A stretch of DNA of 64,000 nucleotides from IMGVR_UViG_3300020438_000007:124001-188000; one strand, 5' to 3'. Counted from the stretch's first letter, positions 40,604 to 53,370 are shown. The notes: generated by a model from the letters alone, not told the origin. Translations and numbers: made by a program.

Positions 40604-40627
40604 TGTGCCAGTGTCTTAAGCGACTGC
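40604..40627 (-). promoter_or_regulatory. Palindromic promoter element copy 1
   Basis: TGTGCCAGT-gtctta-AGCGACTGC (+ strand); TACAAT -10 at 40568-40573 with the array's geometry; distal half degenerate. Confidence 0.65.
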
Positions 40628-40957
40628 CAGTGATACTCCGTTAACGAAATCGGATGTAGCACCAGCACTAGTCACGAACCAGGACCAGTTCTTTTGAAAG
40701 ACGCCATTCTGTCTGCCATCTGTGAACTCATTGATCAGAGCGTTTAAGCGTGATTTGGTTGTATTAGACTGCCAACCGCCATCGAAGAGGACCAGAGCAT
40801 CGTTAGTGATAGTGGCGATATGATTGCCATGTAGTTTAACTACTGCCTCCATTTGATTTGTATCAGAGTTGAAAGCATTCTCTACAGTAGTATTAGAAGA
40901 GCGGAAGTCCTGGCGTGAACGGATTGCGGTGTTCATTTGAGTTTCGATCTTACGCAT
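40616..40957 (-). CDS. Hypothetical protein (113 aa)
   Basis: MRKIE..M..AI...LHGNHIA...DGGWQSNTTKSRLNAL; preceded by a full element and leader. Confidence 0.75.
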   Translation of the reverse strand: MRKIETQMNTAIRSRQDFRSSNTTVENAFNSDTNQMEAVVKLHGNHIATITNDALVLFDGGWQSNTTKSRLNALINEFTDGRQNGVFQKNWSWFVTSAGATSDFVNGVSLAVA

Positions 40958-41020
40958 GATTGTTTGTTTGTTTGTTATGTACTTATTATAATAGCATGGC
41001 GGGTCGCTGTCAGCCAGCTC

Positions 41021-41044
41021 TGTGCCAGTTCTTCTAGTGGCACA
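41021..41044 (-). promoter_or_regulatory. Palindromic promoter element copy 2
   Basis: TGTGCCAGT-tcttct-AGTGGCACA; 7-bp gap, CTGACA-17-TATAAT, TAAC(AAAC)3 leader. Confidence 0.85.
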
Positions 41045-41062
41045 CTGAGCGCTTCTGCTTGG

Positions 41063-41090
41063 TTGACATTCTCTGGCAGTGCCCTATAAT
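41063..41090 (+). promoter_or_regulatory. Plus-strand sigma70-like promoter in non-coding DNA
   Basis: TTGACA-16-TATAAT. Confidence 0.6.
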
Positions 41091-41263
41091 GGACCTATAA
41101 GAGATTCGGGGTAGGATCTATAAACTATTCGACACTGGTGCTGCTCCGCATTAATTGTTACAGCGTGTTACGGAATACCTATGGCACACTTGACGGGCCT
41201 TGTCTACCCTTATGTTGAGCAATGTGTCTTATGTGTGGTTATGAGGATTCGGGGCATTCTCGG

Positions 41264-41292
41264 TTGACTTATGAGCGTTTCCGTGTTATAAT
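41264..41292 (+). promoter_or_regulatory. Plus-strand sigma70-like promoter in non-coding DNA
   Basis: TTGACT-17-TATAAT with extended TG. Confidence 0.65.
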
Positions 41293-41445
41293 GCCCGCTT
41301 AGATGTCTATAAGATTCACCCTTATTTCGCTTTACTTAGTGATCTCTATACAAAACAGAAGTATATTTAATTAACCTTTTTTAATGATTCTCAAATGATA
41401 CTTAAAAGAGACAATTAGACCCACTAAGTGTAGCAAACTCTCTCC

Positions 41446-41640
41446 TTATAGTTCATCATTTAGTTCATATATCTTTCTCTGAATTTGCTTTAGTTTAGCA
41501 TAGATACTTCCCTGTCTATTTGCTACTGGTAGAGCATTGTAATTAGCAAGACTTTCTAATACTAACAACTTGATAAGTGCCATTTCCTCATTATCAAATA
41601 GAGGGGCACTTAGCATGAGGTTCGCTTCTTTAAGGGTCAT
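41446..41640 (-). CDS. Hypothetical protein (~64 aa)
   Basis: Track ORF 41446..41667, restarted at MTLKEA. Confidence 0.45.
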   Translation of the reverse strand: MTLKEANLMLSAPLFDNEEMALIKLLVLESLANYNALPVANRQGSIYAKLKQIQRKIYELNDEL

Positions 41641-41776
41641 ACGATTCAACCTCGATTTCGATAGCATAGTCTGGGTAAGTTGTCTCTTCTACATTATCAT
41701 TACTATCCGCTAATCTCTGTAGAAATGCTTCACTTGATTCCCTTACAGTTTCTTCGATTGTTATTACTTTATCCAT
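41630..41776 (-). CDS. Small acidic hypothetical protein (48 aa; not in track)
   Basis: MDKVITIEETVRESSEAFLQRLADS... Confidence 0.45.
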   Translation of the reverse strand: MDKVITIEETVRESSEAFLQRLADSNDNVEETTYPDYAIEIEVESYDP

Positions 41777-41983
41777 CTAGACTGCCTCCTTAGTGTTATA
41801 CTTACTAATGGCAATTTGTCCCAGATTCTCAACATATAGAGTCTTAACTCTCTCTCCATTCTTATCATTCAACTCTAGTAGTTTGTTCCAGTTCCAGTTA
41901 CTTGGCGAAACACAGTTTGCTTCACTTACTGTAAAGTCTAATGTAACACGATAGCGAGTTACTGATTGTGATTGAGAGTCCAT
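41777..41983 (-). CDS. Hypothetical protein (68 aa)
   Basis: ORF track; promoter at 42011-42039. Confidence 0.65.
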   Translation of the reverse strand: MDSQSQSVTRYRVTLDFTVSEANCVSPSNWNWNKLLELNDKNGERVKTLYVENLGQIAISKYNTKEAV

Positions 41984-42010
41984 AAGAATGAGAGTGGTGG
42001 ATTACATTTA

Positions 42011-42039
42011 ATTCTACCAGATATTGCACTAATTGTCAA
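42011..42039 (-). promoter_or_regulatory. Sigma70-like promoter without palindrome
   Basis: TTGACA-17-TAGAAT. Confidence 0.7.
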
Positions 42040-42295
42040 CCAGTGGACGATATTTCCTCTACTACATTGTTATTTAGTGGGGAAACATTGACGATGATTG
42101 TGATTACTTAAGCACGCTTATATAAAAAAATTCGGGCGTTCGCCTCTAAGGGACTAGGAACTATGTAATACTAATAAAGACGAATTACTCTTATTAGTTT
42201 ACAACTAGTGGTCTTACTAAGTGATTAACAAACAACTCACTTATGCCACTAAGTATAGCGATTAAAGACGATTAATCACTCATTAGAACTGTCAT

Positions 42296-42430
42296 TCACC
42301 TCTTTTTCTTTTTGGACTGTTTAACCATCTTGTTAAACTTCTTTGATTGACTGGGTGACATACCACAAAAATAGTTCAGTAGATTGCCTTCATACTGGTC
42401 AGCAATGTTTGAAAGTTCGTTATCCATCAT
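42296..42430 (-). CDS. Hypothetical protein (44 aa; not in track)
   Basis: MMDNELSNIADQYEGNLLNYFCGM...KKKKR; ATGA overlap with the upstream ORF. Confidence 0.5.
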   Translation of the reverse strand: MMDNELSNIADQYEGNLLNYFCGMSPSQSKKFNKMVKQSKKKKR

Positions 42431-42591
42431 TGTGCTAAACTCTCAAAACGCTTCATCGCAAGTTTAATTGCTTCCTCATCGATTTGATCAATAGTGACGA
42501 TTTGTCCTTTATAACGATAAAAGTTTTCAATTTCTTCTAGTGACTCCTCATAAAGTGTTTCAAGTAATTCATCATTAACAGCGCAACTCAT
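42427..42591 (-). CDS. Hypothetical protein (54 aa; not in track)
   Basis: MSCAVNDELLETLYEE...AIKLAMKRFESLAQ. Confidence 0.6.
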   Translation of the reverse strand: MSCAVNDELLETLYEESLEEIENFYRYKGQIVTIDQIDEEAIKLAMKRFESLAQ

Positions 42592-42944: not shown

Positions 42945-43006
42945 GTTTGTTTGTTTGTTTGTTATACTATTATTATAGGGCATTGAGATTGAATATCAAC
43001 CCCACT

Positions 43007-43030
43007 TGTGCCAGTTTGATTAGTGGCACA
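43007..43030 (-). promoter_or_regulatory. Palindromic promoter element copy 3
   Basis: TGTGCCAGT-ttgatt-AGTGGCACA; 7-bp gap, TTGATA-16-TATAAT. Confidence 0.9.
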
Positions 43031-43270
43031 CTATCGGTTGACTTTCTCCAAGTCACTTAGATAGCATTCCACTGTATGAAACTCATAGTCATTAATGTAA
43101 GTTTTAATAACAGCGTAGTCTCTACTTCTATCCAATAAAACTACATCACCTTCTAGATCATCATGTACGAGCGATTTAACACTAGTGCCTAGTTTGATGT
43201 TTGCTGTTACATCTTGACCAATTTTAAGAACATCTTTTTTACATAGTTCTTTGTATTCTTGAATTGTCAT
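43031..43270 (-). CDS. Hypothetical protein (79 aa)
   Basis: Track ORF restarted at MTIQEY (TAATG coupling). Confidence 0.65.
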   Translation of the reverse strand: MTIQEYKELCKKDVLKIGQDVTANIKLGTSVKSLVHDDLEGDVVLLDRSRDYAVIKTYINDYEFHTVECYLSDLEKVNR

Positions 43271-43431
43271 TATAGTTGATTCTCCCATACTGTTGATTTA
43301 AAACGTCTCACTGCTTTGTCTAACAGTTTAATATCACCATCGCAGATATCAGCGGCAGACTCATCCTCTACATGAGAGAATGAATTGTTGATATCACCTA
43401 TGAGAGTGAGTAATGCTTCGTAATTAGTCAT
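43270..43431 (-). CDS. Hypothetical protein (53 aa; not in track)
   Basis: MTNYEALLTLIGDINNSF...; follows an element and leader. Confidence 0.65.
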   Translation of the reverse strand: MTNYEALLTLIGDINNSFSHVEDESAADICDGDIKLLDKAVRRFKSTVWENQL

Positions 43432-43470
43432 AGTTGTTTGTTTGTTATACTACTATTATAGTCGATCGAA

Positions 43471-43743
43471 CTAGAATTTAGTCCTTGATTGTGCCACTTT
43501 AGCGATTGTCCTACTATTCATAAACTGAGCAGGTCTCTTTGTATTACATGTAACAGCATAATTCATATCAAGTAAAATATCAATTTCTTCCGCCATGTTA
43601 AACACGTTGATTGCTTCATTTTCGACTGTCTTACCTTTATAGGTAACCACCTTCAATCTAGTAAGGTTACTAACTTTATTTTGTCCATCTTTGACTTCAT
43701 AATAGTCAACAACTGTGTTTAGGTTATCAGATTGAAATTGCAT
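43471..43743 (-). CDS. Hypothetical protein (90 aa)
   Basis: ORF track; follows an element and leader; reads through element 4. Confidence 0.7.
   Translation of the reverse strand: MQFQSDNLNTVVDYYEVKDGQNKVSNLTRLKVVTYKGKTVENEAINVFNMAEEIDILLDMNYAVTCNTKRPAQFMNSRTIAKVAQSRTKF
43490..43513 (-). promoter_or_regulatory. Palindromic promoter element copy 4
   Basis: TGTGCCACT-ttagcg-ATTGTCCTA inside the upstream CDS; TATAAT and leader retained, -35 lost. Confidence 0.7.
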
Positions 43744-43803
43744 GATGTTCTTTGTTTGTTATACTATCATTATAGGGCACTGATATGCAATAACAACACT
43801 TAG

Positions 43804-43827
43804 TGTGCCACTAATCAAACTGGCACA
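43804..43827 (-). promoter_or_regulatory. Palindromic promoter element copy 5
   Basis: TGTGCCACT-aatcaa-ACTGGCACA. Confidence 0.9.
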
Positions 43828-43843
43828 CTGTTGGTTGATTATA

Positions 43844-44092
43844 TCACCAATCTGGGGTAGGTTGCTTTGCCTGTGCTTTTTCGACCTTATCATAGTATTT
43901 GTCAACTGAACCCTCTAAGATTTCAAAGATAGTATCAACTTCATTTACATAATCATCAAATGGTTCTAATAATTGACCTTTAACTCTGTCCGCTCTGTAA
44001 TGCTCACTCTTTTTAACACTATCCTCAAGTGAGCATAGGATAACACCTATTTGTGCTTCGGTTAGTGTGACTTTGTATAGTGTATTATTCAT
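43844..44092 (-). CDS. Hypothetical protein (~82 aa)
   Basis: Track ORF 43844..44116; start trimmed. Confidence 0.65.
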   Translation of the reverse strand: MNNTLYKVTLTEAQIGVILCSLEDSVKKSEHYRADRVKGQLLEPFDDYVNEVDTIFEILEGSVDKYYDKVEKAQAKQPTPDW

Positions 44093-44357
44093 GGATCCAG
44101 TTTCCTTGCTCATCATAATCTCCTTCAGTAATAGATTCTAATCCATATGGATCACTATCAATAACGACTGATTGTAAACCTTTATAATCACGTCCCTGTA
44201 AACGATAGACTTCTTTCTGTTGTCTCATATCTCGATCGAGTCTATAACATAATTCTGCATTTAGTGCCATTAATTGACGTTTATCATCACTATGTTCAGA
44301 ATAATGAAAGTTCATACACTCTAACATGTATTCAAGTTCAATAATAGTAAATTTCAT
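44085..44357 (-). CDS. Hypothetical protein (~90 aa)
   Basis: Track ORF restarted at MKFTII. Confidence 0.65.
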   Translation of the reverse strand: MKFTIIELEYMLECMNFHYSEHSDDKRQLMALNAELCYRLDRDMRQQKEVYRLQGRDYKGLQSVVIDSDPYGLESITEGDYDEQGNWIHE

Positions 44358-44358
44358 T

Positions 44359-44535
44359 TTAGTAGTCTCCTCCATATATTTCTTCCATCAACTCATCATA
44401 AAGTTTCTTTAGTTTAGTTGCTGTAATACTCTTTGCTTTATCATTAATTTTCTCTTCTGTCTTATCATCAAAATTCTTAGCAAGATCTTTGATCTCTTTG
44501 ATGTAATAACGACAGTCTGATCTTGTTATGGTCAT
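44359..44535 (-). CDS. Hypothetical protein (58 aa; not in track)
   Basis: MTITRSDCRYYIKEIKDLAKNF...; follows an element and leader. Confidence 0.65.
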   Translation of the reverse strand: MTITRSDCRYYIKEIKDLAKNFDDKTEEKINDKAKSITATKLKKLYDELMEEIYGGDY

Positions 44536-44595
44536 AGATTTGTTTGTTTGTTATACTACTATTATAGTAGCATGAGATTCAATAACAACCACGAC

Positions 44596-44619
44596 TATGC
44601 CAGTAATTAAACTGGCACA
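44596..44619 (-). promoter_or_regulatory. Palindromic promoter element copy 6
   Basis: TATGCCAGT-aattaa-ACTGGCACA. Confidence 0.85.
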
Positions 44620-44777
44620 TCATAGGTTGATTTATTTTTAAGAACATGCCAATATTCTTCATAAGATAGAGTTTCTTCTTTATCTGTATCGGTATTGAGT
44701 ACAATATCAAAAGGATAAAAAGCATAATATCTCATATGATCATCAACATACTCTTTGATTTGTTTATACTTAGTCAT
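44607..44777 (-). CDS. Hypothetical protein (56 aa)
   Basis: Track ORF restarted at MTKYKQ; last codons (VPV*) are encoded by element 6. Confidence 0.6.
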   Translation of the reverse strand: MTKYKQIKEYVDDHMRYYAFYPFDIVLNTDTDKEETLSYEEYWHVLKNKSTYDVPV

Positions 44778-45003
44778 CAGAACACCCCTTGATAACGCTT
44801 TGTATAGTATCGGTAAAATCCTCATCAAAGAATTCTTCGATCTCTACCATAGCATCATTAAATGAATGGTCATCTATCCATTTTTGCATATCTTGAGCAA
44901 CATATACAACTAAATCCTCGACTGACATTCCATCAACGACTCGATCGATATAACGCTCTTTAAGAGCATTGAATTGTTTGTCTGTTAGTTTTGTTTTGTT
45001 CAT
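44770..45003 (-). CDS. Hypothetical protein (77 aa)
   Basis: Track ORF restarted at MNKTKL. Confidence 0.65.
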   Translation of the reverse strand: MNKTKLTDKQFNALKERYIDRVVDGMSVEDLVVYVAQDMQKWIDDHSFNDAMVEIEEFFDEDFTDTIQSVIKGCSDD

Positions 45004-45007
45004 AGTG

Positions 45008-45211
45008 TTAATCATGGATGATAGAATCAAAAATTGTGTCATCATTAGGGAACTCATTTACCTTAGCAATTGCTGCTGCGGCAACCATGTTCCAGACCTT
45101 TTGTCCTGACATTTTCTGATCTTGACAATGGAAAGCAACTGTATCCTCTAAGAGTTCAAGCACTTCCATTGACTCATTAAAGAGTTTTTCGTATTCTACA
45201 GGGTTCATCAT
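45008..45211 (-). CDS. Hypothetical protein (67 aa)
   Basis: ORF track. Confidence 0.65.
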   Translation of the reverse strand: MMNPVEYEKLFNESMEVLELLEDTVAFHCQDQKMSGQKVWNMVAAAAIAKVNEFPNDDTIFDSIIHD

Positions 45212-45441
45212 ACAGTCCTCACGAATAGTTTTGAAATGCGATCGTCAATTTCATTGACTCTCTCATAAACTGATCTGCCTTCGATCAATTCATCTTCTTG
45301 CATACTGTCATCATCATAACAACGATAATCTTCAAGTGCATTTGAGATAGTGTCCCATTCTCCATCAGTGAAGAATGAGCGAATTGTTTGCAGTTGGTCA
45401 AAAGAGAAGTCTCTAACCAGTGATCCTTGACGATTCATCAT
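45208..45441 (-). CDS. Hypothetical protein (77 aa)
   Basis: ORF track; follows an element and leader. Confidence 0.7.
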   Translation of the reverse strand: MMNRQGSLVRDFSFDQLQTIRSFFTDGEWDTISNALEDYRCYDDDSMQEDELIEGRSVYERVNEIDDRISKLFVRTV

Positions 45442-45502
45442 AAAGTTTGTTTGTTTGTTATGTACTTATTATAGGGCAGTGACTCAAAGAATCAACCACC
45501 CT

Positions 45503-45526
45503 TGTGCCAGTTTGTCTACTGGTCTA
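45503..45526 (-). promoter_or_regulatory. Palindromic promoter element copy 7
   Basis: TGTGCCAGT-ttgtct-ACTGGTCTA. Confidence 0.85.
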
Positions 45527-45818
45527 ATGCCCATAGACTTCCACCATCAAAATCGGTAGGGTATCCATAGTTTCTAACTAACATATCTCTAACTCTTTCT
45601 CTGTCAAGTGAATCACCATCGCCCCAAGTGAATCTATCATTATCCAAATCAGATATCACTTGTAAGTAATCTTCCGTAGCAAGTGTAATGTCACCTTTAG
45701 TAACATTCATTTGATAAAGTGCATCATCAGCACCATAGAATGAAAAGACATAATCAATAAACTCATCAAGTTGATTGATGTCATATTTTGATTTTCCGAT
45801 AGCAACGATAGAAGTCAT
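45516..45818 (-). CDS. Hypothetical protein (100 aa)
   Basis: ORF track; 'FIDYVFSFYG...W..GDS.DRERVRDM' motif. Confidence 0.7.
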   Translation of the reverse strand: MTSIVAIGKSKYDINQLDEFIDYVFSFYGADDALYQMNVTKGDITLATEDYLQVISDLDNDRFTWGDGDSLDRERVRDMLVRNYGYPTDFDGGSLWALDQ

Positions 45819-45878
45819 AAACCTGTTTGTTTGTTATACTATCATTATAGGGCAGTGATATTGAATATCAACCGCCCT

Positions 45879-45902
45879 TGTGCCACTTATTCAACTGTCA
45901 CT
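45879..45902 (-). promoter_or_regulatory. Palindromic promoter element copy 8
   Basis: TGTGCCACT-tattca-ACTGTCACT. Confidence 0.85.
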
Positions 45903-46085
45903 AGGTACAACCATTTGTGGGATTCCATCTTGAATATCCGCTAAGTGTCCTAGTTTATGACGAATTTTCCTAAAATTAACGTCAAAATCATCGCTCAACT
46001 TGTCAGTAACCCTACAAGGCGTACCTAAGATAAGTTGAAGCAGAGCGTCACACTCTGCTGCGGTTAGATTTGGGTCATTCATCAT
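45891..46085 (-). CDS. Hypothetical protein (64 aa)
   Basis: ORF track. Confidence 0.6.
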   Translation of the reverse strand: MMNDPNLTAAECDALLQLILGTPCRVTDKLSDDFDVNFRKIRHKLGHLADIQDGIPQMVVPSDS

Positions 46086-46564
46086 GCTACCTCGTATAAT
46101 TCTTTTGGATAATCAGCAGGGATAGTTTCTTTGATAGGTTTGAATGTATCGTTGAAATCTTTAGTCTCTTTGTTCCAAAAACTGAGACCATAACACTCTA
46201 GAGTTCCGTCAAGTTCCTTGACGTAAGCATACTCTCCACAACACTTGTCAGTATCCTCAAAGAAGTGAGAGATAGTTTTGTGAAGTTTAGGAGCATTATC
46301 ATCCATAGACTCACCTCGCTCTGTATAATAGCAAGGTTTGTACTCTCTACCTTCTAACTCTTCGGGTTCCTTAAGATCCCAACCTGAGTTAGTATAGCAA
46401 CAACTCATGTTACCACCATCAATAAGTTCAGCGAATTGGTCTCTAGTATCATAGTGCTTGTTGAGAGTAACTCCCAACCACTGTGGATAACCATCCCAGT
46501 GATGATATACTGAAAGGATTGAACCATCAGCAAGGCGAAGTCCGATTCTTGAATTTGTTGACAT
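46082..46564 (-). CDS. Phage protein with HWDGYP motif (160 aa)
   Basis: MSTNSRIG...SVYHHWDGYP..LG..L..HY motif, recurrent in phages; function unknown. Confidence 0.75.
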   Translation of the reverse strand: MSTNSRIGLRLADGSILSVYHHWDGYPQWLGVTLNKHYDTRDQFAELIDGGNMSCCYTNSGWDLKEPEELEGREYKPCYYTERGESMDDNAPKLHKTISHFFEDTDKCCGEYAYVKELDGTLECYGLSFWNKETKDFNDTFKPIKETIPADYPKELYEVA

Positions 46565-46626
46565 AGTGTGTTGTTTGTTTGTTATGTACTTATTATAGTG
46601 TGGTGGGAATGGAAATCAACCACCTG

Positions 46627-46650
46627 TGTGCCACTAATCTAAGTGTCACA
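46627..46650 (-). promoter_or_regulatory. Palindromic promoter element copy 9
   Basis: TGTGCCACT-aatcta-AGTGTCACA. Confidence 0.9.
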
Positions 46651-46903
46651 GGTCTGCTGGGTCTGAAGGCATCACCTGTGGTACGATCATCAGTTGTAAC
46701 CTATCAACGACAGCGGGCACTAGATAACTACCATCAAAAGAGCAAGTTCCGTCATCATTCTTGTTACCTAACTTCTCACAAATTGCATCACTAACTAACT
46801 CATATAAAACGTTATGTTTCCTTGGGTTCTGATAAATGTGTTCAATAACTTCCAATACCAAAGCATCAGCAAGTTTGTTTAATGTCTCTTTAGATAGAGT
46901 CAT
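46646..46903 (-). CDS. Hypothetical protein (85 aa)
   Basis: ORF track; AGGAGG RBS. Confidence 0.7.
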   Translation of the reverse strand: MTLSKETLNKLADALVLEVIEHIYQNPRKHNVLYELVSDAICEKLGNKNDDGTCSFDGSYLVPAVVDRLQLMIVPQVMPSDPADL

Positions 46904-46928
46904 TTAGTCCTCCTTTTTGTTTGTGTGG

Positions 46929-47315
46929 TCATTTTCCAATTCCCATAGGGTCATCTGATTCGCTCTCTAATTGAGAGACAATTGCACTATCAATTTTGTC
47001 TAGTTCTTCTTGATGAAACTTTCTTGTCCATCCATCATTGTATGATGAATTTGCATTTACCAAATGGTGTGCTCGGTTTCCAATCAAAACATCATTTTCT
47101 TCTCTATAATATTCATAAACAAGTTGTTGATATATGTCAAACAACTCTTGCAATACTACTCCTTCGAGATCAGTCCATGAACCAACGTAGTCAACTTGTG
47201 TCTCATCATATCCGCCCTTCTTGAAACTAGGAGCACTAAAAAAGTGCATATCTGTGTCTATCATGAAGTGATGACCATACTTCTCACTCTCGTAAGTTTT
47301 TACATATGTCCTCAT
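46929..47315 (-). CDS. Hypothetical protein (128 aa)
   Basis: ORF track; ATGA overlaps. Confidence 0.7.
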   Translation of the reverse strand: MRTYVKTYESEKYGHHFMIDTDMHFFSAPSFKKGGYDETQVDYVGSWTDLEGVVLQELFDIYQQLVYEYYREENDVLIGNRAHHLVNANSSYNDGWTRKFHQEELDKIDSAIVSQLESESDDPMGIGK

Positions 47316-47497
47316 TTTGTACCTCCATCAACTGCTATCATTTTGTGGTATATGTCATATGAAATATAATCTCTAATATCATTTGAGAGATCAGGGTCAT
47401 GCTTTGTTTCTACTCTCTCTTTGAGTGAGAAATAAGTCGGTTCAAATATCTCAAAGAGTCTATTGAACTCGGTATCTGTTAGGTTTAATGTTTTCAT
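47312..47497 (-). CDS. Hypothetical protein (61 aa)
   Basis: ORF track; ATGA overlaps. Confidence 0.65.
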   Translation of the reverse strand: MKTLNLTDTEFNRLFEIFEPTYFSLKERVETKHDPDLSNDIRDYISYDIYHKMIAVDGGTK

Positions 47498-47709
47498 AGG
47501 TCAATAGTATGCTCAAGTTTTAGACGTAATAGTGAGTCAACAACCGATTCCATAGTTGTCTTAGAGTAACCAACTGCATAGGGATAATCCTTCTTGTAGT
47601 CAGCGGCACTCTGTTCCGAAGCACCATAACATACCTCAATTGATTCATTGAGTGACATAATTATTGCATCAATAACGTAGGTCGGGATTTCAAGTTTGGG
47701 ATCTGGCAT
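47494..47709 (-). CDS. Hypothetical protein (71 aa)
   Basis: ORF track; follows element 10. Confidence 0.65.
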   Translation of the reverse strand: MPDPKLEIPTYVIDAIIMSLNESIEVCYGASEQSAADYKKDYPYAVGYSKTTMESVVDSLLRLKLEHTIDL

Positions 47710-47765
47710 TGAATTACCTTATATGTTTATATTATAGTATAATAAAATAGGATTGCAACCACTCA

Positions 47766-47789
47766 TGTGACATTTATTCAACTGGCACA
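47766..47789 (-). promoter_or_regulatory. Palindromic promoter element copy 10
   Basis: TGTGACATT-tattca-ACTGGCACA; 7-bp gap, TTGCAA-16-TATAAT. Confidence 0.85.
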
Positions 47790-47802
47790 CCCGATGAAGT
47801 GA

Positions 47803-48774
47803 TTAAGAGTTGGTAATCACTTCATCTGGTACGCCCCATGTCTTTTTCATGTTAAAGTTTGCATAACTGAAGCGTTGACGTTTGACAAGTTTGTATGTAC
47901 CATATTTGTTAGTCATCACATAACCCTCATGTTCATAGGGTTGACCATCAATAAGACACTCTACATCTTGTGACGTAGTGATGCCTTGCATCAATAGTTC
48001 TTTAACTTCGATAATCATATTGTACAAGTGGAATAGGTTTTTTGAATATCCTGTATCACTTGCAAGTTGATCTGGGTTAAGTTTCTTGCCTTCCCTCACA
48101 TAACTGTTGACGATTACCTTTAGTGTTTTCCCTTCCTTGAGCGTGGGGAACTCGGTGAATCGTACCAACGTGCGAATAAGAATGAGCAAAAATTCGATCT
48201 TTGCATTTAAGCGGTTTGATCGGGCGCCCATACTAGCATGAGTATCAACTTGATAGTGTCTCAAGTTGGTACAGTCGAGATTCCCATAGTTATTAGTCCT
48301 ATAATGGAATACTGCATCTAATTCTTGAATAGTTGCACCAACATATTCAGTATGAGTCGCTACAACCACTGATTGTTTGATTACTTTATCAAATTTGTAG
48401 GTGATTGTGTTAGGTTTGTAAGTATCATTACCACCATAACCAATGAAGTCGCACTGATATACCCCATGCTCTGTGGGCAGGGTCTCAAGACAAGTGTGTA
48501 GAATACTTGCTACGTTTGGGATGTTCCCATGATTAGTTTCAATGTCATCATGAGTATAGTTTATCTTGATCTTTTTCTTATTGAATACTGATTTAGTACC
48601 AACAAAGAATCTACCATTCTCAGGGTTGACTCCATAGACGACAGCGGGGGCACCATCATATTTGACTGATATTTGATTTCTCTTGCTCTTCAGAAACTTG
48701 ATCACATCAACAGCACCCTCCTTACCAAGGGTCAGGATGCTGTCCTCTGGGTGTTCTAGGTGTTTGTTCTTCAT
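47803..48774 (-). CDS. Ligase-like nucleotidyltransferase-fold protein (DUF6267-like, 323 aa)
   Basis: Motif I KxDG (SVKYDGAP), motif IV (HEGYV), motif V (YKLVK); N-terminal KHLEHPED. Confidence 0.7.
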   Translation of the reverse strand: MKNKHLEHPEDSILTLGKEGAVDVIKFLKSKRNQISVKYDGAPAVVYGVNPENGRFFVGTKSVFNKKKIKINYTHDDIETNHGNIPNVASILHTCLETLPTEHGVYQCDFIGYGGNDTYKPNTITYKFDKVIKQSVVVATHTEYVGATIQELDAVFHYRTNNYGNLDCTNLRHYQVDTHASMGARSNRLNAKIEFLLILIRTLVRFTEFPTLKEGKTLKVIVNSYVREGKKLNPDQLASDTGYSKNLFHLYNMIIEVKELLMQGITTSQDVECLIDGQPYEHEGYVMTNKYGTYKLVKRQRFSYANFNMKKTWGVPDEVITNS

Positions 48775-48815
48775 ACTACCATTATACACCATGCCAACAG
48801 GAAAACAACCCTCTC

Positions 48816-48839
48816 TGTACCAGTTTGTAGACTGTCACA
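48816..48839 (-). promoter_or_regulatory. Palindromic promoter element copy 11
   Basis: TGTACCAGT-ttgtag-ACTGTCACA; 7-bp gap, TTGTTT-16-TATAAT. Confidence 0.85.
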
Positions 48840-49143
48840 CAAAGAATTGTTCTAGTGGGGTCAAGTTAAGTTTCATTGCAGTATAGGGCGAAGTGTCCTC
48901 TATTGAGACTTCTTTACCTATTCTATTTGAATTGATGGGGGCGTAGTAAGCGTGCGTACTGCTTCTCTTTGTTCTCTTATGCTTGACGAATCCCCAGATA
49001 CAACGAGATTCATCACCATCATTATAGAGAAACCTATAGTCAGATACAGTCCAGATAGCATCCACATTAGTTTTAAATTGTATCGACTCATAGCGGTATC
49101 CTTTAGGTGGTTGGTGAATAAAATCGTCTGGAAGTGCGGTCAC
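48835..49143 (-). CDS. Hypothetical protein (102 aa)
   Basis: ORF track. Confidence 0.7.
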   Translation of the reverse strand: MTALPDDFIHQPPKGYRYESIQFKTNVDAIWTVSDYRFLYNDGDESRCIWGFVKHKRTKRSSTHAYYAPINSNRIGKEVSIEDTSPYTAMKLNLTPLEQFFV

Positions 49144-49159
49144 AATTTATCAGTTAAAA

Positions 49160-49225
49160 GATTGTGGGAGAGATTCGACTTAAAGAGCATTTTCCACTGG
49201 GGTCGCTCACTCTTGCCTCCCACAT
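49160..49225 (-). ncRNA. Candidate small structured RNA or structured leader (RNA A)
   Basis: Starts at the predicted TSS of element 12; 8-bp closing stem UGUGGGAG/CUCCCACA, inner stem AAGAGU/GCUCUU, possible CGAC/GUCG pseudoknot. Confidence 0.45.
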
Positions 49226-49264
49226 TTATATAATAATCCATTGGGATAGGATTACAACCAGTAG

Positions 49265-49288
49265 TGTGCCAGTTTATTATATGTCACA
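49265..49288 (-). promoter_or_regulatory. Palindromic promoter element copy 12
   Basis: TGTGCCAGT-ttatta-TATGTCACA; 7-bp gap, TTGTAA-16-TATTAT. Confidence 0.8.
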
Positions 49289-49468
49289 TTCGGGGTTGAG
49301 AAATTGTCTATTTCGCTTTACCTTAGTAGTTGAAATATCAATTAGGTCTTCTAACTCTTCAATAGAATTAGATAGGTTATCATCATCTTTCTCTTCAGAA
49401 TAGAAAAATAATGCTTCACTTAACAAGTTGAATTGCTTGTCAGTTAGTGTTACATCGATCTTATACAT
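49277..49468 (-). CDS. Hypothetical protein (63 aa)
   Basis: ORF track. Confidence 0.65.
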   Translation of the reverse strand: MYKIDVTLTDKQFNLLSEALFFYSEEKDDDNLSNSIEELEDLIDISTTKVKRNRQFLNPECDI

Positions 49469-49469
49469 C

Positions 49470-50081
49470 TTACCTCATAGGTATGTTAAATGACATGATT
49501 GTCCTCTGTTTATCTGATTTAGATACTGGCGATTCATGTAACAATACAGAGGGGAAAGTTAGAATCTCACCTTCATTTACTGAAGGCGCAACCTTATCTA
49601 TTGTACCATAAAAAGGGTTAGGATTAGGACTATAAAATGTAGTGGGAAAGTGCTCTTCTGCATCAAATTCAACATATAATACACATGATATATTCATTAA
49701 ACCATGATTGTGGGCACCATGATATTGTCCTCTGTCATATCTCTGTGACCATAGTTGCCAATCCTCAATACCTTTGAAAGGGCAATCTCCTCTATATCTA
49801 TCATTCAATATCTGTGTGTATTCATTAACTAACCTATCTAAATCAGTTTCCAATATCTCATAAAACTCCATAAGATATGGTGCTGAAGTCTGATACTTAT
49901 AGTAATCAGTCTGGCACTCATAATCTTGTTTAAAGTAATCAAACTCTTGAAGATCATCACCAGTAAAATCCATTAGATTTAAGAGTTTAGATTTCTTGTC
50001 ACTCCAATCATCTACCACAAACTTAGTGATAGGGAACCCAAATAGATTTAGAGATTGACCGTTCATTTCTTGTGATTTCAT
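49470..50081 (-). CDS. Putative 2OG-Fe(II) oxygenase (HxH type, 203 aa)
   Basis: AHNHG..ISCVLYV...TFPSVLLHES...RTIMSFN. Confidence 0.8.
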   Translation of the reverse strand: MKSQEMNGQSLNLFGFPITKFVVDDWSDKKSKLLNLMDFTGDDLQEFDYFKQDYECQTDYYKYQTSAPYLMEFYEILETDLDRLVNEYTQILNDRYRGDCPFKGIEDWQLWSQRYDRGQYHGAHNHGLMNISCVLYVEFDAEEHFPTTFYSPNPNPFYGTIDKVAPSVNEGEILTFPSVLLHESPVSKSDKQRTIMSFNIPMR

Positions 50082-50211
50082 TTTCTGTCTTGAGAACCCT
50101 TGCCACCACTAGACCAAAGACCTGTTTTTTCCATAATTCTGTCCGTCAGGTGTGTTTGGTCATCCATCCCACTCTCGTTATGGAAAAAAGACTAAGTGTC
50201 ATCCTAGAAGT

Positions 50212-50626: not shown

Positions 50627-50663
50627 GTAGTTTAATTATACTATAATGTTAAGTTATTTGCAA

Positions 50664-51896
50664 CTACCTTGTCGCTCTTGATACCTGTGACTCTCCTCTA
50701 GTAAAGATAGTGTCAACAACTGATTGAAGGCGACGTTCTGTACCAATACCCACATTGCTGTAAACTGGTACAAACATCTTGCCAAATGGTTTTACATAAC
50801 CATTTCCATTGATGTTAGGTTTGAGAGCACCTGTACTAATCTTAAGTGCATCTTCCTTATGTAGTCGAATGACTCGACCAATAGTCTGTGCCATGGTGAT
50901 TAGATCAAGATTCCTCAATAGAATACAAGCAGTCAATCCGCTCACATTCATACCCTCTGAGAGAATAGAATGATGAAACATGACAAACTTCTTGTCAGGG
51001 TCAGCACCCCACTTGTTCATCAAATTGAAGAATGTCTTGCGAGTGACCTTCTTACCATTGATGATAGCACCATACTTTGATGTAATCCACATTACATTGT
51101 ATTTCATAGAGTGACATACTGCCATGAAATCAGTTTGAGTAATCAACTTGTGAATGTTCTTACTAGACTTAGCAGTGACCAATACTTTGTCCATGTGATC
51201 TTCATTTTCAAGAGCATCAAGAATCATACACCTGTCAATCTGCTCGACTGATTCATAGAACCCGATAGGATACTTGACTGACTTGACTTGAGGCGGTACA
51301 ATGTAACCCTTTTCAATCAACTCTGGAGCAGCGACTTCTGCAATAACATTACCATACACCTTGACATTGTTCATACCTCTCTCTTGTGATGTATGATGTT
51401 TAGGTGTGGCAGTGAAGTAAAACTTACGTCTGGTAATCTTAGAGCGATTCTTGACACTCTCAAAGAAGTTCCTTTGAACTGAATTGTGTGCCTCATCATA
51501 ATATACTGTGTCTGCTTCAACATCTTCTCTGACTTTGTGAAGTGAGTGATATGTTGTAAAGATCAACTGGTTCCTTGTACTGTTATGATGCCACTCTTGA
51601 ATCTCTTCTGGGTTAGTAGTAGTCTTATAGTTAGTCTCTCCACTATGAACATGAAGCACCTCGACATTATCAATGTGCTCTAAGAACTCCTCACACAACT
51701 GTTGTGCAAGTAAGATTCTAGGAGCAACAACAATAATAGTCTGCGGAATAGGCATACTGAATCGCCACTTAGCGTCCATAATCATACATATTGTTTTACC
51801 GCCACCTGTGGGTACAAGAACCTGCCCCCACTTGTGTTGCATGGTATCAATTATGTCTGTTTGATGGTCACGAAGTTGCATAGTCAGTTGTCTCAA
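50664..51896 (-). CDS. Superfamily 2 DEAH-box helicase (410 aa)
   Basis: Q motif LRDHQ, Walker A PTGGGKT, DEAH, motif III TAT, motif V ILSEG, motif VI QTIGRVIR. Confidence 0.9.
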   Translation of the reverse strand: MRQLTMQLRDHQTDIIDTMQHKWGQVLVPTGGGKTICMIMDAKWRFSMPIPQTIIVVAPRILLAQQLCEEFLEHIDNVEVLHVHSGETNYKTTTNPEEIQEWHHNSTRNQLIFTTYHSLHKVREDVEADTVYYDEAHNSVQRNFFESVKNRSKITRRKFYFTATPKHHTSQERGMNNVKVYGNVIAEVAAPELIEKGYIVPPQVKSVKYPIGFYESVEQIDRCMILDALENEDHMDKVLVTAKSSKNIHKLITQTDFMAVCHSMKYNVMWITSKYGAIINGKKVTRKTFFNLMNKWGADPDKKFVMFHHSILSEGMNVSGLTACILLRNLDLITMAQTIGRVIRLHKEDALKISTGALKPNINGNGYVKPFGKMFVPVYSNVGIGTERRLQSVVDTIFTRGESQVSRATR

Positions 51897-51913
51897 TACT
51901 CATATTATAGGAT

Positions 51914-51939
51914 AAAAAAAGACCCCTGCATGGGGTCTT
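51914..51939 (-). terminator. Intrinsic terminator superimposed on the -35 region of element 13
   Basis: Minus strand AAGACCCC-ATGCA-GGGGTCTT with a T-run. Confidence 0.7.
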
Positions 51940-51962
51940 GTGACAGTTTCAGAACTGTGCCA
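51939..51962 (-). promoter_or_regulatory. Palindromic promoter element copy 13
   Basis: TGTGACAGT-ttcaga-ACTGTGCCA; TATAAT at 51904-51909. Confidence 0.75.
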
Positions 51963-52134
51963 ATAGTTTTTGAGTCTCAGGATCGAACTCCTCTTTGACT
52001 CCATTGATGTCCATCAACCAATCATCTGCCTCAAGTCGTTCAAACTCTTCGGTTCCAAGTGTCCATTCGGGATCGCCCGAGAACATTTGGGCATTTTCTT
52101 CAAACTCTTGTGGGGTCATTGTCTTAATAATCAA
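51949..52134 (-). CDS. Hypothetical protein (61 aa)
   Basis: ORF track. Confidence 0.6.
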   Translation of the reverse strand: MIIKTMTPQEFEENAQMFSGDPEWTLGTEEFERLEADDWLMDINGVKEEFDPETQKLLAQF

Positions 52135-52164
52135 AATTTACAAAAAATAATAAACACATCAAAC

Positions 52165-52398
52165 TCAGCAACTTGCAGGCGAGTATTGTTGTGGTTCAGT
52201 CAGGAAATCTGTCACCTGATAACCAAGATCGAGACGTGAATTGATTGTCTCAGTCATTTCTCTCTTGCTCATCAGTCGCATTGACATAGCATTAACTTCG
52301 CCTTGATTGTTCTTCAGTTTGAGAGTATAAACGAATTTCTCAGTCAAAATGTTGTGAGGGCGGAACTCTACTGACATTGAACCTGATGTGAGTTGCAT
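52165..52398 (-). CDS. Hypothetical protein (77 aa)
   Basis: ORF track; follows element 14. Confidence 0.7.
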   Translation of the reverse strand: MQLTSGSMSVEFRPHNILTEKFVYTLKLKNNQGEVNAMSMRLMSKREMTETINSRLDLGYQVTDFLTEPQQYSPASC

Positions 52399-52457
52399 GG
52401 GGTCTCTTGTGTTTACTCTCTTATTATAATGGGATCAGAGTCCCCTGCAACCACCTG

Positions 52458-52481
52458 TGTGCCAGTTATCCAACTGGTGGT
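52458..52481 (-). promoter_or_regulatory. Palindromic promoter element copy 14
   Basis: TGTGCCAGT-tatcca-ACTGGTGGT; 7-bp gap, TTGCAG-16-TATAAT. Confidence 0.8.
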
Positions 52482-52765
52482 GTGCCTGGTGCCTGAGCAG
52501 GCATTGATTCCATATCAAACTTACTAGATGCCTTCTCTAGTTCTACCTTACCCTTGAGGGCATTGACCTCTGCAATAAGAGTCTTAATATCATCTTGTTG
52601 TTTATACAAGGCAGCATTAACCAATGACTCCAATGTAGTCAATCTCTCATCAAGATTACCAATGGTTCGCATTGATGCTTGTAATTGTTTCTTTAGTCTA
52701 TCTACTTGTTGCAACTTAGTTTTAGTAAGTGCTTCTGTGTCTGATGTTAGTGAATCGTATCCCAT
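52466..52765 (-). CDS. Coiled-coil hypothetical protein (99 aa)
   Basis: ORF track; heptad pattern; CTAAATA late promoter at 52786-52792. Confidence 0.7.
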   Translation of the reverse strand: MGYDSLTSDTEALTKTKLQQVDRLKKQLQASMRTIGNLDERLTTLESLVNAALYKQQDDIKTLIAEVNALKGKVELEKASSKFDMESMPAQAPGTPPVG

Positions 52766-52805
52766 AATTTATGTTACTCTTTGATTATTTAGATAGGTGT
52801 GCGTA

Positions 52806-53231
52806 TTACCTGATGTACAGATAACCACCTGCCCAGTCACAGTTTGATAGCATCCACTGACGTTGATTGATGTCTCTCATATCAAATCTAACGTGTTTAG
52901 CAGGTGCTTTCCATGAAGCAGGTTTGTAAACCTCTCCTGTCATTTTGTCAACAAAAGCATGAACCCCTGCACTATCATATTTGCCTTGGTGGTAGTCATT
53001 CTGAATGATCTTATGATACCTTTTGCCTGATGTTATAGTAAACCTCATGCACTCTTCATCATTCTCAATTTTGTTAATCCTATCCTGTAGGTATGGATTA
53101 TTTTCCTCTGAATTATTCTTGATGCAAGAGCGAACTGCGTAGTTCTTATACTGTTGTTCGAGAGCACGGCAAAGTGTCTCTGTCCATTGAAGTACTTCTA
53201 CTTTTGTGAGTGATTGTTCTAGTGTTGACAT
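52806..53231 (-). CDS. Hypothetical protein (141 aa)
   Basis: 'GKRYHKI...VHAFVDK.TGEVYKPASWKAPAKHVRF' motif. Confidence 0.75.
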   Translation of the reverse strand: MSTLEQSLTKVEVLQWTETLCRALEQQYKNYAVRSCIKNNSEENNPYLQDRINKIENDEECMRFTITSGKRYHKIIQNDYHQGKYDSAGVHAFVDKMTGEVYKPASWKAPAKHVRFDMRDINQRQWMLSNCDWAGGYLYIR

Positions 53232-53258
53232 AATCTTTGTTTGTATTGTTGTTTGTTA

Positions 53259-53305
53259 AAGAGAAAAGGGGGGAAAGGTAACAAACACAAAACCTTTCCC
53301 TCCAC
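53259..53305 (-). terminator. Terminator-like hairpin directly after the element-15 TSS (RNA C)
   Basis: GGGAAAGGT-TTTGTGTTTGTT-ACCTTTCCC followed by CCCTTTTCTCTTT. Confidence 0.6.
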
Positions 53306-53346
53306 ATTCATATATTACTGCTTTATGGTGGTAATACAACCACCTA

Positions 53347-53370
53347 TGTGCCACTACTTCAACTGTCCAC
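53347..53370 (-). promoter_or_regulatory. Palindromic promoter element copy 15
   Basis: TGTGCCACT-acttca-ACTGTCCAC; 7-bp gap, TTGTAT-16-TAATAT. Confidence 0.8.

What the first reader, a model, noticed from the sequence alone, without database searches (positions are those of the whole stretch)
40604..53370. Upstream genes terminate inside the palindrome in 10 of 15 copies
Seen: stop codons fall at offsets 7-15 (spacer or adjoining bases) in copies 1, 6, 7, 8, 12, 13, 14 and 15, and at the TGA of the distal half-site in copies 9 and 11. For example 44607..44777 ends GTG-CCA-GTT-TAA, using the half-site as codons. The distal half (overlapping the CDS) is the degenerate one, while the promoter-proximal half is conserved. 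Inference: either genes were captured by crossovers within the element, with the element supplying their C-terminus and stop (reminiscent of attC cassettes), or intergenic DNA has been eroded up to the essential half-site.
Basis: partly seen in the sequence, partly recalled or inferred. Interest (0 to 1): 0.6.

Follow-up and report, generated by a model that had tools for sequence, protein, structure and literature searches.

The report
Gene stops overlap cyanophage early-promoter palindrome
In this T4-like cyanophage, small early genes end inside a repeated palindrome just upstream of the next gene's promoter; this comes mainly from extreme genome compaction with bases used twice, not from integron-like gene capture.

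Summary
The window lies in a 230.7-kb relative of Synechococcus phage S-SSM7. On its minus strand there are 15 copies of a ~100-nt early-promoter module: palindrome TGTGMCA-N10-TGKCACA, N5, GGTTGA (-35), TATAAT, an AACAAACAAACA leader, then ATG. In 10 of the 14 copies with a co-directional upstream gene, the stop codon starts inside the palindrome (offsets 1-13).

The pattern holds widely. In 79 unique instances from metagenomic cyanophage contigs, 52 stops lie at offsets 0-13, 16 lie within 6 nt before the palindrome, and none lie further upstream.

The attC-like reading is mostly refuted:
- In 4 of 7 gene families tested, homologs without the module keep the same C-terminal residues and length; a fifth keeps the residues but is 3 aa longer.
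- The phage genome has no integrase.
- Each cassette carries its own promoter.
- The two palindrome arms do not covary.

The erosion reading is supported. It is documented by a deleted distal half (copy 1), a 19-nt frameshifting deletion caught by the spacer TGA (copy 8), and a stop-codon point change (copy 6). Stops sit only where the element's consensus tolerates a stop triplet, so those bases do double duty.

The modules resemble the PeSL regulatory cassettes of other T4-like phages, with an added conserved upstream palindrome that is probably a protein-binding site.

The parts
40605..40626 (-). Copy 1. Only the proximal half TGGCAC(A) is present. The upstream gene 40616-40957 (Kyano_Gp96 family) ends with TAA at offset 8. 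A terminator hairpin plus T-run replaces the -35.
41022..41043 (-). Copy 2. Perfect palindrome, no upstream co-directional gene. It is shared with a divergent plus-strand promoter at 41061-41100.
43008..43029 (-). Copy 3. Perfect palindrome. The upstream ORF 43031-43288 stops at offset -4.
43491..43512 (-). Copy 4. Degenerate distal half and -35. The upstream ORF 43471-43743 reads through the element to offset +39.
43805..43826 (-). Copy 5. Perfect palindrome. The upstream ORF 43844-44116 stops at offset -20.
44597..44618 (-). Copy 6. The upstream ORF 44607-44825 ends ..YDVPV with TAA at offset 9. Relatives end ..KST with TAG 6 nt before an intact palindrome.
45504..45525 (-). Copy 7. The upstream ORF 45516-45818 ends ..LWALDQ with TAG at offset 7. 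Module-less homologs end ..LWALDQEAK.
45816..45901 (-). Copy 8, shown as a complete module: palindrome 45880-45901, GGTTGA 45868-45873, TATAAT 45844-45849, leader, ATG 45816-45818. The upstream ORF 45891-46085 ends S-D-S with TGA at offset 8, after a 19-nt deletion relative to S-SSM7.
46628..46649 (-). Copy 9. The upstream ORF 46646-46903 ends ..DPADL. Its Leu codon plus TGA plus CA forms the distal TGTGACA.
47767..47788 (-). Copy 10. The upstream DUF6267 gene 47803-48792 stops at offset -17. Its S-SSM7 ortholog stops at offset 12.
48817..48838 (-). Copy 11. The upstream 102-aa ORF 48835-49143 (GTG start) ends with TGA at offset 1. This ORF lies in a 329-nt insertion that S-SSM7 lacks.
49266..49287 (-). 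Copy 12. The upstream ORF 49277-49468 ends ..ECDI with TAA at offset 8. The promoter is followed by a hairpin-closed non-coding element instead of an ORF.
51940..51961 (-). Copy 13. Weak distal half. The upstream ORF 51949-52119 ends with TGA at offset 10. An intrinsic terminator sits in place of the -35, ahead of the helicase gene 50664-51896.
52459..52480 (-). Copy 14. The upstream ORF 52466-52765 ends ..PPVG with TAA at offset 12. Module-less homologs have the same tail.
53348..53369 (-). Copy 15. The upstream ORF 53354-53530 ends ..SGQLK with TAG at offset 13, abutting the proximal half.

Best explanation
The palindromes are the upstream part of a repeated ~100-nt early-promoter module. 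The module lies in the hyperplastic early region of a T4-like cyanomyovirus related to S-SSM7. Its layout is TGTGMCA-STTnAnWAAS-TGKCACA, 5 nt, GGTTGA (-35), 16-17 nt, TATAAT, an SD-less AACAAACAAACA leader, then ATG.

Shown from sequence:
- The phage keeps essentially no spare DNA, so the preceding gene always ends at the 5' edge of the module or inside it.
- Stops occupy only those positions where the conserved element tolerates a stop triplet: TGA inside TGTGACA, T8-n-A10, n-W-A, and W12-A-A. The same bases therefore serve as codons and as part of the element.
- The C-terminal residues are mostly the protein's own.
- The stop slides across the element boundary through small deletions and single-base stop gains or losses, so orthologs differ in offset.
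- Selection keeps a stop in the frame actually used, before the proximal half-site and -35.

Inferred:
- The palindrome is a binding site for a dimeric protein that acts on early-promoter activity. It is not an RNA hairpin and not a recombination site.
- The whole modules serve as portable promoter cassettes. General homologous recombination between them shuffles early genes, as described for PeSLs.
For: Module anatomy and copies.

S-SSM7 has the same set of copies. The exact proximal-half/-35/-10 pattern occurs in more than 118 IMG/VR contigs.

Position profile from 94 unique instances: C4, A5, T7, T8, A10, A13 and A14 are 78-96% conserved.

Stop offsets in 79 unique instances: 16 at -6 to -1, 11 at 0-1, 41 at 7-13, and none between -60 and -7. 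The instances fall into 30 upstream gene families, and offsets vary within families.

The used frame has a stop at offsets 0-13 in 52 of 63 ORFs. The other two frames have one in 37 of 126. Odds ratio 11, p = 2e-12.

Native C-termini in module-less homologs: genes at copies 1, 9, 11 and 14, and the shared ..LWALDQ residues at copy 7. The Pfam Kyano_Gp96 profile reaches the end of the copy-1 gene.

Erosion events:
- Copy 1 reads TAA + 5 nt + proximal half, where relatives have TAG + a full palindrome.
- Copy 8 has a 19-nt deletion.
- Copy 6 differs from relatives by TAT versus TAG.

Not a hairpin:
- Only about 5 of 15 palindromes fold better than shuffled controls.
- The central pair is mismatched in 50 of 130 oriented instances.
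- Covariation is not significant at cluster level (OR 1.8, p = 0.30).

No integrase in the phage genome.

The same upstream gene plus module is followed by six or more different downstream genes. Homology breakpoints are enriched at modules: 15 of 54 clusters against 10.6% expected, p = 4e-4.

The PeSL architecture is described in PMC2839356 and PMC4122927.
Against: - No transcription start, binding or expression data were available, so promoter activity and the binding protein are inferred from sequence only.
- In two window genes (copies 6 and 8), and in several metagenomic homologs, the last 3-5 codons are encoded by the element. So 'native C-terminus' is not universal.
- For copies 7 and 14 the polarity is unresolved: the module-less homologs could descend from module-bearing ancestors.
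- Raw counts show a weak excess of complementary central pairs (OR 2.5, p = 0.04, sequences not independent).
- Breakpoint enrichment at modules is only about 2-fold once all gene boundaries are used as the baseline.
- The claim that the distal half degenerates under CDS overlap holds in the window, where all 6 degenerate copies are overlapped. It does not hold in the wider set: mean match 4.3 of 6 with or without overlap.
Confidence: 0.7

Rival explanations
1. Integron/attC-like capture. The palindrome is a recombination site, and genes were inserted by crossovers inside it, so the element supplies each captured gene's C-terminus and stop.
For: - Tails of the copy-8 gene family diverge exactly where the element starts: VPSDS, GVPID, YGTVD, QVTVE.
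- Module-plus and module-less relatives of the copy-7 gene lose homology at the 5' edge of the proximal half.
- The right edge of a 329-nt insertion lies in the distal half of copy 11.
- Contig joints in a viral metagenome map to modules.
Against: - C-termini are native in 4 of 7 families tested, and mostly so in a fifth.
- The genome has no tyrosine recombinase.
- Each cassette carries its own promoter.
- Breakpoints between relatives lie at varied points in the module (after the -35, after the -10, in the leader) and often at module-free gene junctions.
- The arm sequence is conserved without covariation, the opposite of attC.
Confidence: 0.07
2. RNA stem-loop. The palindrome is transcribed at the 3' end of the upstream gene and acts as a terminator, attenuator or 3' stabiliser, like the stem-loop of classical PeSLs. 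A stop inside it would couple translation to hairpin formation.
For: - Perfect copies fold well: -8 to -12.6 kcal/mol, z from -2.5 to -4.7.
- PeSL stem-loops terminate transcription in RB49/phi1.
- In one orthologous series, GTGCCA..TGGCAC alternates with GTGACA..TGTCAC.
- Raw OR is 2.5.
Against: - Ten of 15 window copies do not fold better than shuffles.
- 38% of the 130 oriented instances have a central A.G or C.T mismatch.
- Covariation is not significant at cluster level.
- No U-tract follows the palindrome.
- Where termination is evident (copies 1 and 13), a separate GC-rich hairpin plus T-run provides it.
- Spacing to the -35 is fixed at 5 nt while the sequence in between varies, which points to a DNA-level role.
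Confidence: 0.13
3. Pure chance or annotation artefact. AT-rich spacers contain stop triplets, so mechanically called ORFs appear to end there.
For: - The spacer is AT-rich.
- Unused frames carry a stop at offsets 0-13 in 29% of cases.
Against: - The used frame is closed there in 83% of cases, against 29% for unused frames (p = 2e-12).
- The independent GenBank annotation of S-SSM7 shows the same overlaps.
- The proteins have conserved homologs in hundreds of contigs and Pfam matches.
Confidence: 0.02

Closest known systems
PeSLs (promoter-early stem-loops) of T4-like phages RB49/phi1, T4/PST and KVP40/nt-1 (Arbiol et al. 2010, PMC2839356; Comeau et al. 2014, PMC4122927)
   Same: - Dense arrays of small conserved intergenic cassettes in the hyperplastic early regions of T4-like myoviruses.
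- The cassette starts with the stop codon of the upstream gene, followed by a sigma70-like -35/-10, a leader and the start codon.
- Stem-loops occur in or near the promoter: copies 1 and 13 are true terminators, and copies 7 and 8 have strong -35/-10 spacer stem-loops built on GGGC..GCCC.
- The cassettes are associated with indels and gene replacements between close relatives.
   Different: - Here a sequence-conserved 22-24-bp palindrome sits at a fixed distance upstream of the -35. PeSL stem-loops are defined by structure (GGGG..CCCC and the like) and occupy variable positions.
- Most copies have no significant stem-loop.
- The leader lacks a Shine-Dalgarno sequence.
- Mini-circle formation was not tested.
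- The one cyanophage paper held that mentions PeSLs (S-PM2, PMC4503421) found only a low density of them.
Integron attC sites and gene cassettes
   Same: An imperfect inverted repeat at the 3' end of short, variable, mostly unknown-function genes arranged in an array.
   Different: - No IntI-type recombinase.
- Cassettes are not promoterless.
- The element is conserved in sequence, not in folded structure.
- There is no fixed crossover point.
- C-termini are mostly native.
Operator or activator sites of dimeric regulators placed upstream of the -35 (CRP/FNR/NtcA-type class I/II sites; Fis sites at rrn P1)
   Same: - Two-fold symmetric site with degenerate central bases.
- Fixed spacing to the -35, with the centre about 41.5 nt upstream of the first base of the -10.
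- Present at a whole temporal class of promoters.
- The same palindrome, in the same orientation, lies upstream of the 16S rRNA promoter region in 4 host-family genomes.
   Different: - The half-site TGTGMCA with 10-nt spacing matches no site I know (CRP is TGTGA-N6-TCACA; NtcA is GTA-N8-TAC; both from memory).
- No binding protein has been identified.
- The site is absent from 42 other picocyanobacterial rrn upstream regions.
Overlapping coding and regulatory sequence in compact phage genomes (stop/start overlaps, promoters inside upstream genes, as in T4 and T7; general knowledge)
   Same: The 3' end of one gene is laid over the regulatory region of the next, and C-terminal tails are variable and tolerant.
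   Different: The overlap here is stereotyped. Stops fall at 4-5 permitted positions of one conserved motif, across dozens of unrelated genes and many phages.

Membership tests
PeSL regulatory cassette | Located between small early ORFs in a hyperplastic region of a T4-like myovirus | tested here: met
   The window matches Synechococcus phage S-SSM7 (Kyanoviridae) at 84% identity. The region holds 40-odd small hypothetical ORFs on one strand.
PeSL regulatory cassette | Strong sigma70-like promoter (-35, ~17 nt, -10) followed by a leader and a start codon | tested here: met
   Met at the sequence level only. GGTTGA/TATAAT occur with 16-17 nt spacing in most copies, and the pattern recurs in more than 118 viral contigs. 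Promoter activity was not measured.
PeSL regulatory cassette | Stem-loop structure in or next to the promoter that can terminate upstream transcription | tested here: inconclusive
   Copies 1 and 13 have a GC hairpin plus T-run (z = -3.0). Copies 7 and 8 have spacer stem-loops (z = -3.9 and -4.9). Five palindromes fold significantly. The remaining copies do not.
PeSL regulatory cassette | Cassettes coincide with indels and replacements between close relatives | tested here: met
   15 of 54 breakpoint clusters lie in modules, against 10.6% expected (p = 4e-4). The excess is only about 2-fold over other gene boundaries.
PeSL regulatory cassette | Recombination between neighbouring cassettes yields mini-circles | not testable with these tools
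   Only assembled contigs were available. Go-back joints at modules in run X10 are suggestive but weak.
Integron attC / cassette array | IntI-type tyrosine recombinase encoded with the array | tested here: not met
   PF00589 finds nothing in the 99%-complete phage record.
Integron attC / cassette array | Promoterless cassettes expressed from a common Pc | tested here: not met
   Each unit carries its own -35/-10.
Integron attC / cassette array | Structure conserved rather than sequence (paired arms maintained) | tested here: not met
   The arm sequence is conserved. The central pair is mismatched in 38% of instances, and covariation is not significant.
Intrinsic (rho-independent) terminator | GC-rich hairpin immediately followed by a U-run | tested here: not met
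   The palindrome is followed by N5-GGTTG, not by T-runs. Separate terminators exist in copies 1 and 13.
Host transcription-factor operator (regulon site) | The same site recurs at host promoters | tested here: inconclusive
   There are 16 exact sites in 401 host-family genomes, and 0 for the reversed control. Four are orthologous sites about 420 nt upstream of 16S rRNA. Forty-two other rrn upstream regions have none.

The most novel reading that the evidence does not exclude
The conserved palindrome is the binding site of a cellular factor, or of a phage factor that imitates one. The same site drives rRNA-operon promoters in a subclade of picocyanobacteria. [quoted passage not shown] The module would then be a previously undescribed cyanophage version of PeSL-type mobile promoter cassettes.
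Probability: 0.2. Interest if true: 0.7.

Novelty: new variant of a known kind. Interest (0 to 1): 0.4.

Why it matters
How T4-like cyanophages control early transcription is poorly understood. As I recall, they lack the T4 regulators MotA and AsiA.

A conserved, fixed-position palindrome at essentially all early promoters of the S-SSM7 lineage, and in over a hundred marine viral contigs, is a concrete and testable candidate operator or activator site.

The stop-codon overlap shows how far coding and regulatory information can be superimposed. It also gives a natural mutational series (full, half-eroded and absent distal half) that indicates which bases are dispensable.

The modules help explain gene shuffling in the cyanophage 'ORFan' regions. 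For annotation, they give a simple rule for calling the ends of small early genes and for predicting early promoters.

Tried and rejected
- First pattern search used a 7-nt spacer and found nothing. The spacing between the 8-nt half-sites is 6 nt, i.e. 10 nt between the hexamers.
- tRNA and Rfam scans of the region found nothing.
- Literature searches for a described cyanophage early-promoter palindrome found none in the held library. Doron et al. 2016 (Syn9 TSS map) is not held, and I did not look up Sullivan et al. 2010. Prior description therefore cannot be excluded.
- 'The spacer is a three-frame stop trap' is rejected. Unused frames are closed at about the chance rate, 29%.
- 'The distal half degenerates because the CDS overlaps it' is not supported outside the window.
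- Hairpin covariation is not significant.
- 'The palindrome is a general host rrn promoter element' is rejected. It is absent from 42 fetched 16S upstream regions and present only in 4 related genomes.
- Contigs of four public runs were laid on 43000-48900. Joints map to modules, but they come from contigs at 90% likeness with short sides, so the evidence is weak.
- The small hairpin element after promoter 12 has fold z = -1.3 and was not established as an RNA gene.

Full report
**What the window is**

The window is bases 124001-188000 of a 230,739-bp virus record that is 99% complete. Region 40-54 kb matches Synechococcus phage S-SSM7 (Kyanoviridae, a T4-like cyanomyovirus) at about 84% identity in collinear blocks. 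All genes there lie on the minus strand. Most are small hypothetical ORFs. The exceptions are a helicase (50664-51896), a 2OG-Fe(II) oxygenase (49470-50081), a DUF6267 protein (47803-48792), a DUF7717 protein and a Kyano_Gp96 protein. This is a typical early, hyperplastic region.

**The repeated element**

Read on the minus strand, the repeats are whole modules of about 100 nt. Each consists of:
- TGTGMCA, a 10-nt AT-rich spacer, then TGKCACA
- 5 variable bases
- GGTTGA (-35-like)
- 16-17 nt
- TATAAT
- a conserved A/C-rich leader (AGTAyATAACAAACAAACA) without a Shine-Dalgarno sequence
- ATG

Copy 13 (51940-51961) is weak and carries a true terminator where the -35 should be. S-SSM7 has the same set at homologous places.

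The module is therefore a widespread cyanomyovirus feature.

From 94 unique instances the upstream element has this consensus: g-t-G-M-C-A-S-T-T-n-A-n-W-A-A-S-TGGCACA. The inner distal bases (C4, A5, T7, T8) and A13/A14 are 82-96% conserved and A10 78%. The outer GTG is only 40-66% conserved.

**Check of the observation**

Taking the first distal base as offset 0, the upstream ORF stops start at these offsets:

| Copy | 1 | 2 | 3 | 4 | 5 | 6 | 7 | 8 | 9 | 10 | 11 | 12 | 13 | 14 | 15 |
|---|---|---|---|---|---|---|---|---|---|---|---|---|---|---|---|
| Offset | 8 | none | -4 | +39 | -20 | 9 | 7 | 8 | 1 | -17 | 1 | 8 | 10 | 12 | 13 |

- Against a uniform null over offsets -60 to +27, p = 2e-5.
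- The GenBank CDS ends of S-SSM7, called by others, give offsets 12, 8, 12, 1, 7, 9, -20, 39 and 11.
- In the metagenomic set, 79 unique instances have an upstream ORF of at least 45 codons. Their stops lie at -6 to -1 (16 instances), 0-1 (11), 7-13 (41) and beyond 22 (11). None lies between -60 and -7.
- These instances represent 30 unrelated upstream gene families. Within a family the offset often differs between orthologs, for example {-1, 0, 8}, {1, 8, 12} and {-4, 12}.

**Is the element an all-frame stop trap?**

No. Among ORFs that reach the element, the frame in use has a stop at offsets 0-13 in 52 of 63 cases. The other two frames of the same elements have one in only 37 of 126 cases (OR 11, p = 2e-12). 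Stops are therefore kept specifically in the frame that needs them, before the proximal half-site and -35.

The preferred offsets are 1, 8, 9, 11 and 12. These are exactly the places where the consensus can spell a stop without touching a conserved base:
- TGA in TGTGACA
- T8-n-A10
- n-A10-n
- n-W-A
- W12-A13-A14

This is what I mean by dual use of bases.

I fetched homologs of the upstream genes from viral contigs and compared tails and downstream DNA.

*Copy 1 gene (Kyano_Gp96).* The tail ..ELA(V/I)(A/S)* is the same in dozens of homologs with no module. Relatives have TAG followed by a complete palindrome. The window has TAA + 5 nt + proximal half, and another relative has TAA + 1 nt + proximal half. 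The distal half and spacer were deleted stepwise, and the protein tail did not change.

*Copy 9 gene.* The tail ..MPSDPAxL* is invariant with or without the module. Where the module is present, the last Leu codon (CTG/TTG) plus TGA plus CA spells the distal half. In one lineage the stop is TAA only 2 nt before the proximal half, which is again erosion.

*Copy 14 gene.* The tail ..PPVG* is identical in two module-less relatives.

*Copy 11 gene.* Tail length is the same in four module-less homologs.

*Copy 7 gene.* The protein ends ..LWALDQ*. Its nearest module-less homologs end ..LWALDQEAK*. DNA homology runs through the spacer (TAG versus GAG) and breaks at the edge of the proximal half.

*Copy 8 gene.* S-SSM7 and L044 end ..VPDESTGWQ* with TGA at offset 1. 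Distant homologs end ..GGWQ* in front of a full palindrome. The window and several relatives carry a 19-nt deletion. It shifts the frame, so the ORF now reads the distal half as S-D-S and stops at the spacer TGA.

*Copy 6 gene.* Relatives end ..KST* with TAG 6 nt before the palindrome. The window has TAT there and runs on through GTG-CCA-GTT to TAA.

In summary, the element supplies the tail in two window genes. In both, the cause is a simple deletion or point change, not a capture event. Elsewhere the tail is native.

**attC-like capture**

This reading does not hold:
- No tyrosine recombinase is encoded.
- Each unit has its own promoter.
- The arms are conserved in sequence without covariation.
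- Breakpoints between relatives fall at various places in the module: after the -35 (copy 14 versus L101), after the -10 (copy 7 versus L130) and in the leader.
- Breakpoints are as common at module-free gene junctions as at modules.

Modules are enriched for breakpoints: 15 of 54 clusters against 10.6% expected (p = 4e-4). The same upstream gene plus module is followed by at least six different downstream genes. This fits homologous exchange between repeated promoter cassettes, the mechanism proposed and partly demonstrated for PeSLs in RB49/phi1, T4/PST and KVP40/nt-1. In that work the cassette is also drawn as starting with the upstream stop codon.

**Hairpin or protein site?**

The evidence favours a DNA site for a dimeric protein:
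- Only the perfect copies fold better than shuffled controls. Ten of 15 window copies do not.
- Among 130 correctly oriented instances of GTG(M)CA-N10-TG(K)CAC, the central pair is C/G in 61, A/G in 38, A/T in 19 and C/T in 12. That means 38% are mismatched.
- Association is OR 2.5 (p = 0.04) on non-independent counts, and OR 1.8 (p = 0.30) on 71 clusters.
- No U-run follows the palindrome.
- Where termination is evident, a separate GC hairpin plus T-run does the job (copies 1 and 13).
- The 5-nt distance to GGTTG is constant while its sequence varies.

The binding protein itself is not identified.

**Host side**

The exact pattern occurs 16 times in 401 genomes of the host family, and 0 times for the reversed control.

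Four hits (L369, L371-L373) are orthologous. The palindrome has the same asymmetry and a similar spacer as the phage copies. It lies about 420 nt upstream of the 16S rRNA gene, in the same orientation, about 32 nt ahead of a TGnTACCTT extended -10-like box. Its flanks have diverged.

It is not general. Forty-two other 16S upstream regions of the family have nothing better than chance. This is a lead towards a cellular binding factor, not a result.

**Literature and novelty**

I found no description of this cyanophage palindrome in the held library. However, key cyanophage papers are not held, or I did not look them up, so prior description cannot be excluded.

I rate this as a new variant of a known kind (PeSL-type cassettes). 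The stop-codon overlap itself is an ordinary, if unusually stereotyped, consequence of compaction.

Noticed in passing
window 41061-41100 (+), with palindrome 41022-41043: A divergent plus-strand sigma70-like promoter (GGTTGACA, 17 nt, TATAAT) shares palindrome copy 2 with the minus-strand promoter. It sits about 17 nt from the palindrome instead of 5, roughly one helical turn further. S-SSM7 also has a divergent pair on one palindrome (L005 576 + / 597 -). What the plus-strand promoter transcribes is unclear.
   Followed up: partly
window 49160-49232 (-): Promoter 12 is followed not by an ORF but by a ~65-nt element closed by a 9-bp stem. The S-SSM7 copy has a compensatory change (GTGGGAG/CTCCCAC to GTGAGAG/CTCTCAC). 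Other contigs carry different inserts after the same AATGTG start. Fold z is only -1.3 and there is no Rfam match. It may be a small early RNA.
   Followed up: partly
window 48835-49163: A 329-nt insertion carries a 102-aa ORF with a GTG start. It is present in the window and L044 but absent from S-SSM7, L043, L107 and L083. Its right edge lies in the distal half of copy 11, and its left edge lies at the end of the hairpin element.
   Followed up: yes
window 50068-50210: A 142-nt stretch between the 2OG-Fe(II) oxygenase gene and the next ORF is absent from all compared relatives (S-SSM7, L044, L043, L083). No module is associated with it.
   Followed up: no
window 53250-53300 (-): Promoter 15 is followed within about 15 nt by a GC-rich hairpin and a T-run, before the next ORF. 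It looks like an attenuator or a very short transcript, and it is conserved in S-SSM7 and six contigs.
   Followed up: no
L369, L371, L372, L373 (host-family genomes G127, G011, G100, G071): A conserved copy of the phage-type palindrome (TGTGACA..TAGTGGCACA) lies about 420 nt upstream of the 16S rRNA gene, pointing towards it and ahead of a TGnTACCTT box. It is not found in 42 other rrn upstream regions of the family.
   Followed up: partly
L375 (G382:C1 about 131.4 kb; second site at about 137.9 kb): A complete phage-type module (palindrome, TATAAT, ACATAAGCAAA leader, ATG) sits in a 44% GC stretch of a large contig of a host-family genome. It could be a phage-derived island or a mis-binned phage contig.
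   Followed up: no
genome C1 about 78756 and 81090 (outside the window): Two further complete modules lie about 45 kb upstream of the window. A weaker one lies near genome position 2422. Their downstream genes are conserved in many metagenomic contigs.
   Followed up: no
window 43000-48900, run X10: Contigs of a viral metagenome join 45871 to 43000, 48786 to 46616 and 47497 to 43424. These are points inside or at the edge of modules, which suggests natural variants with reshuffled cassettes. The evidence is weak: contigs, 90% likeness and short sides.
   Followed up: partly
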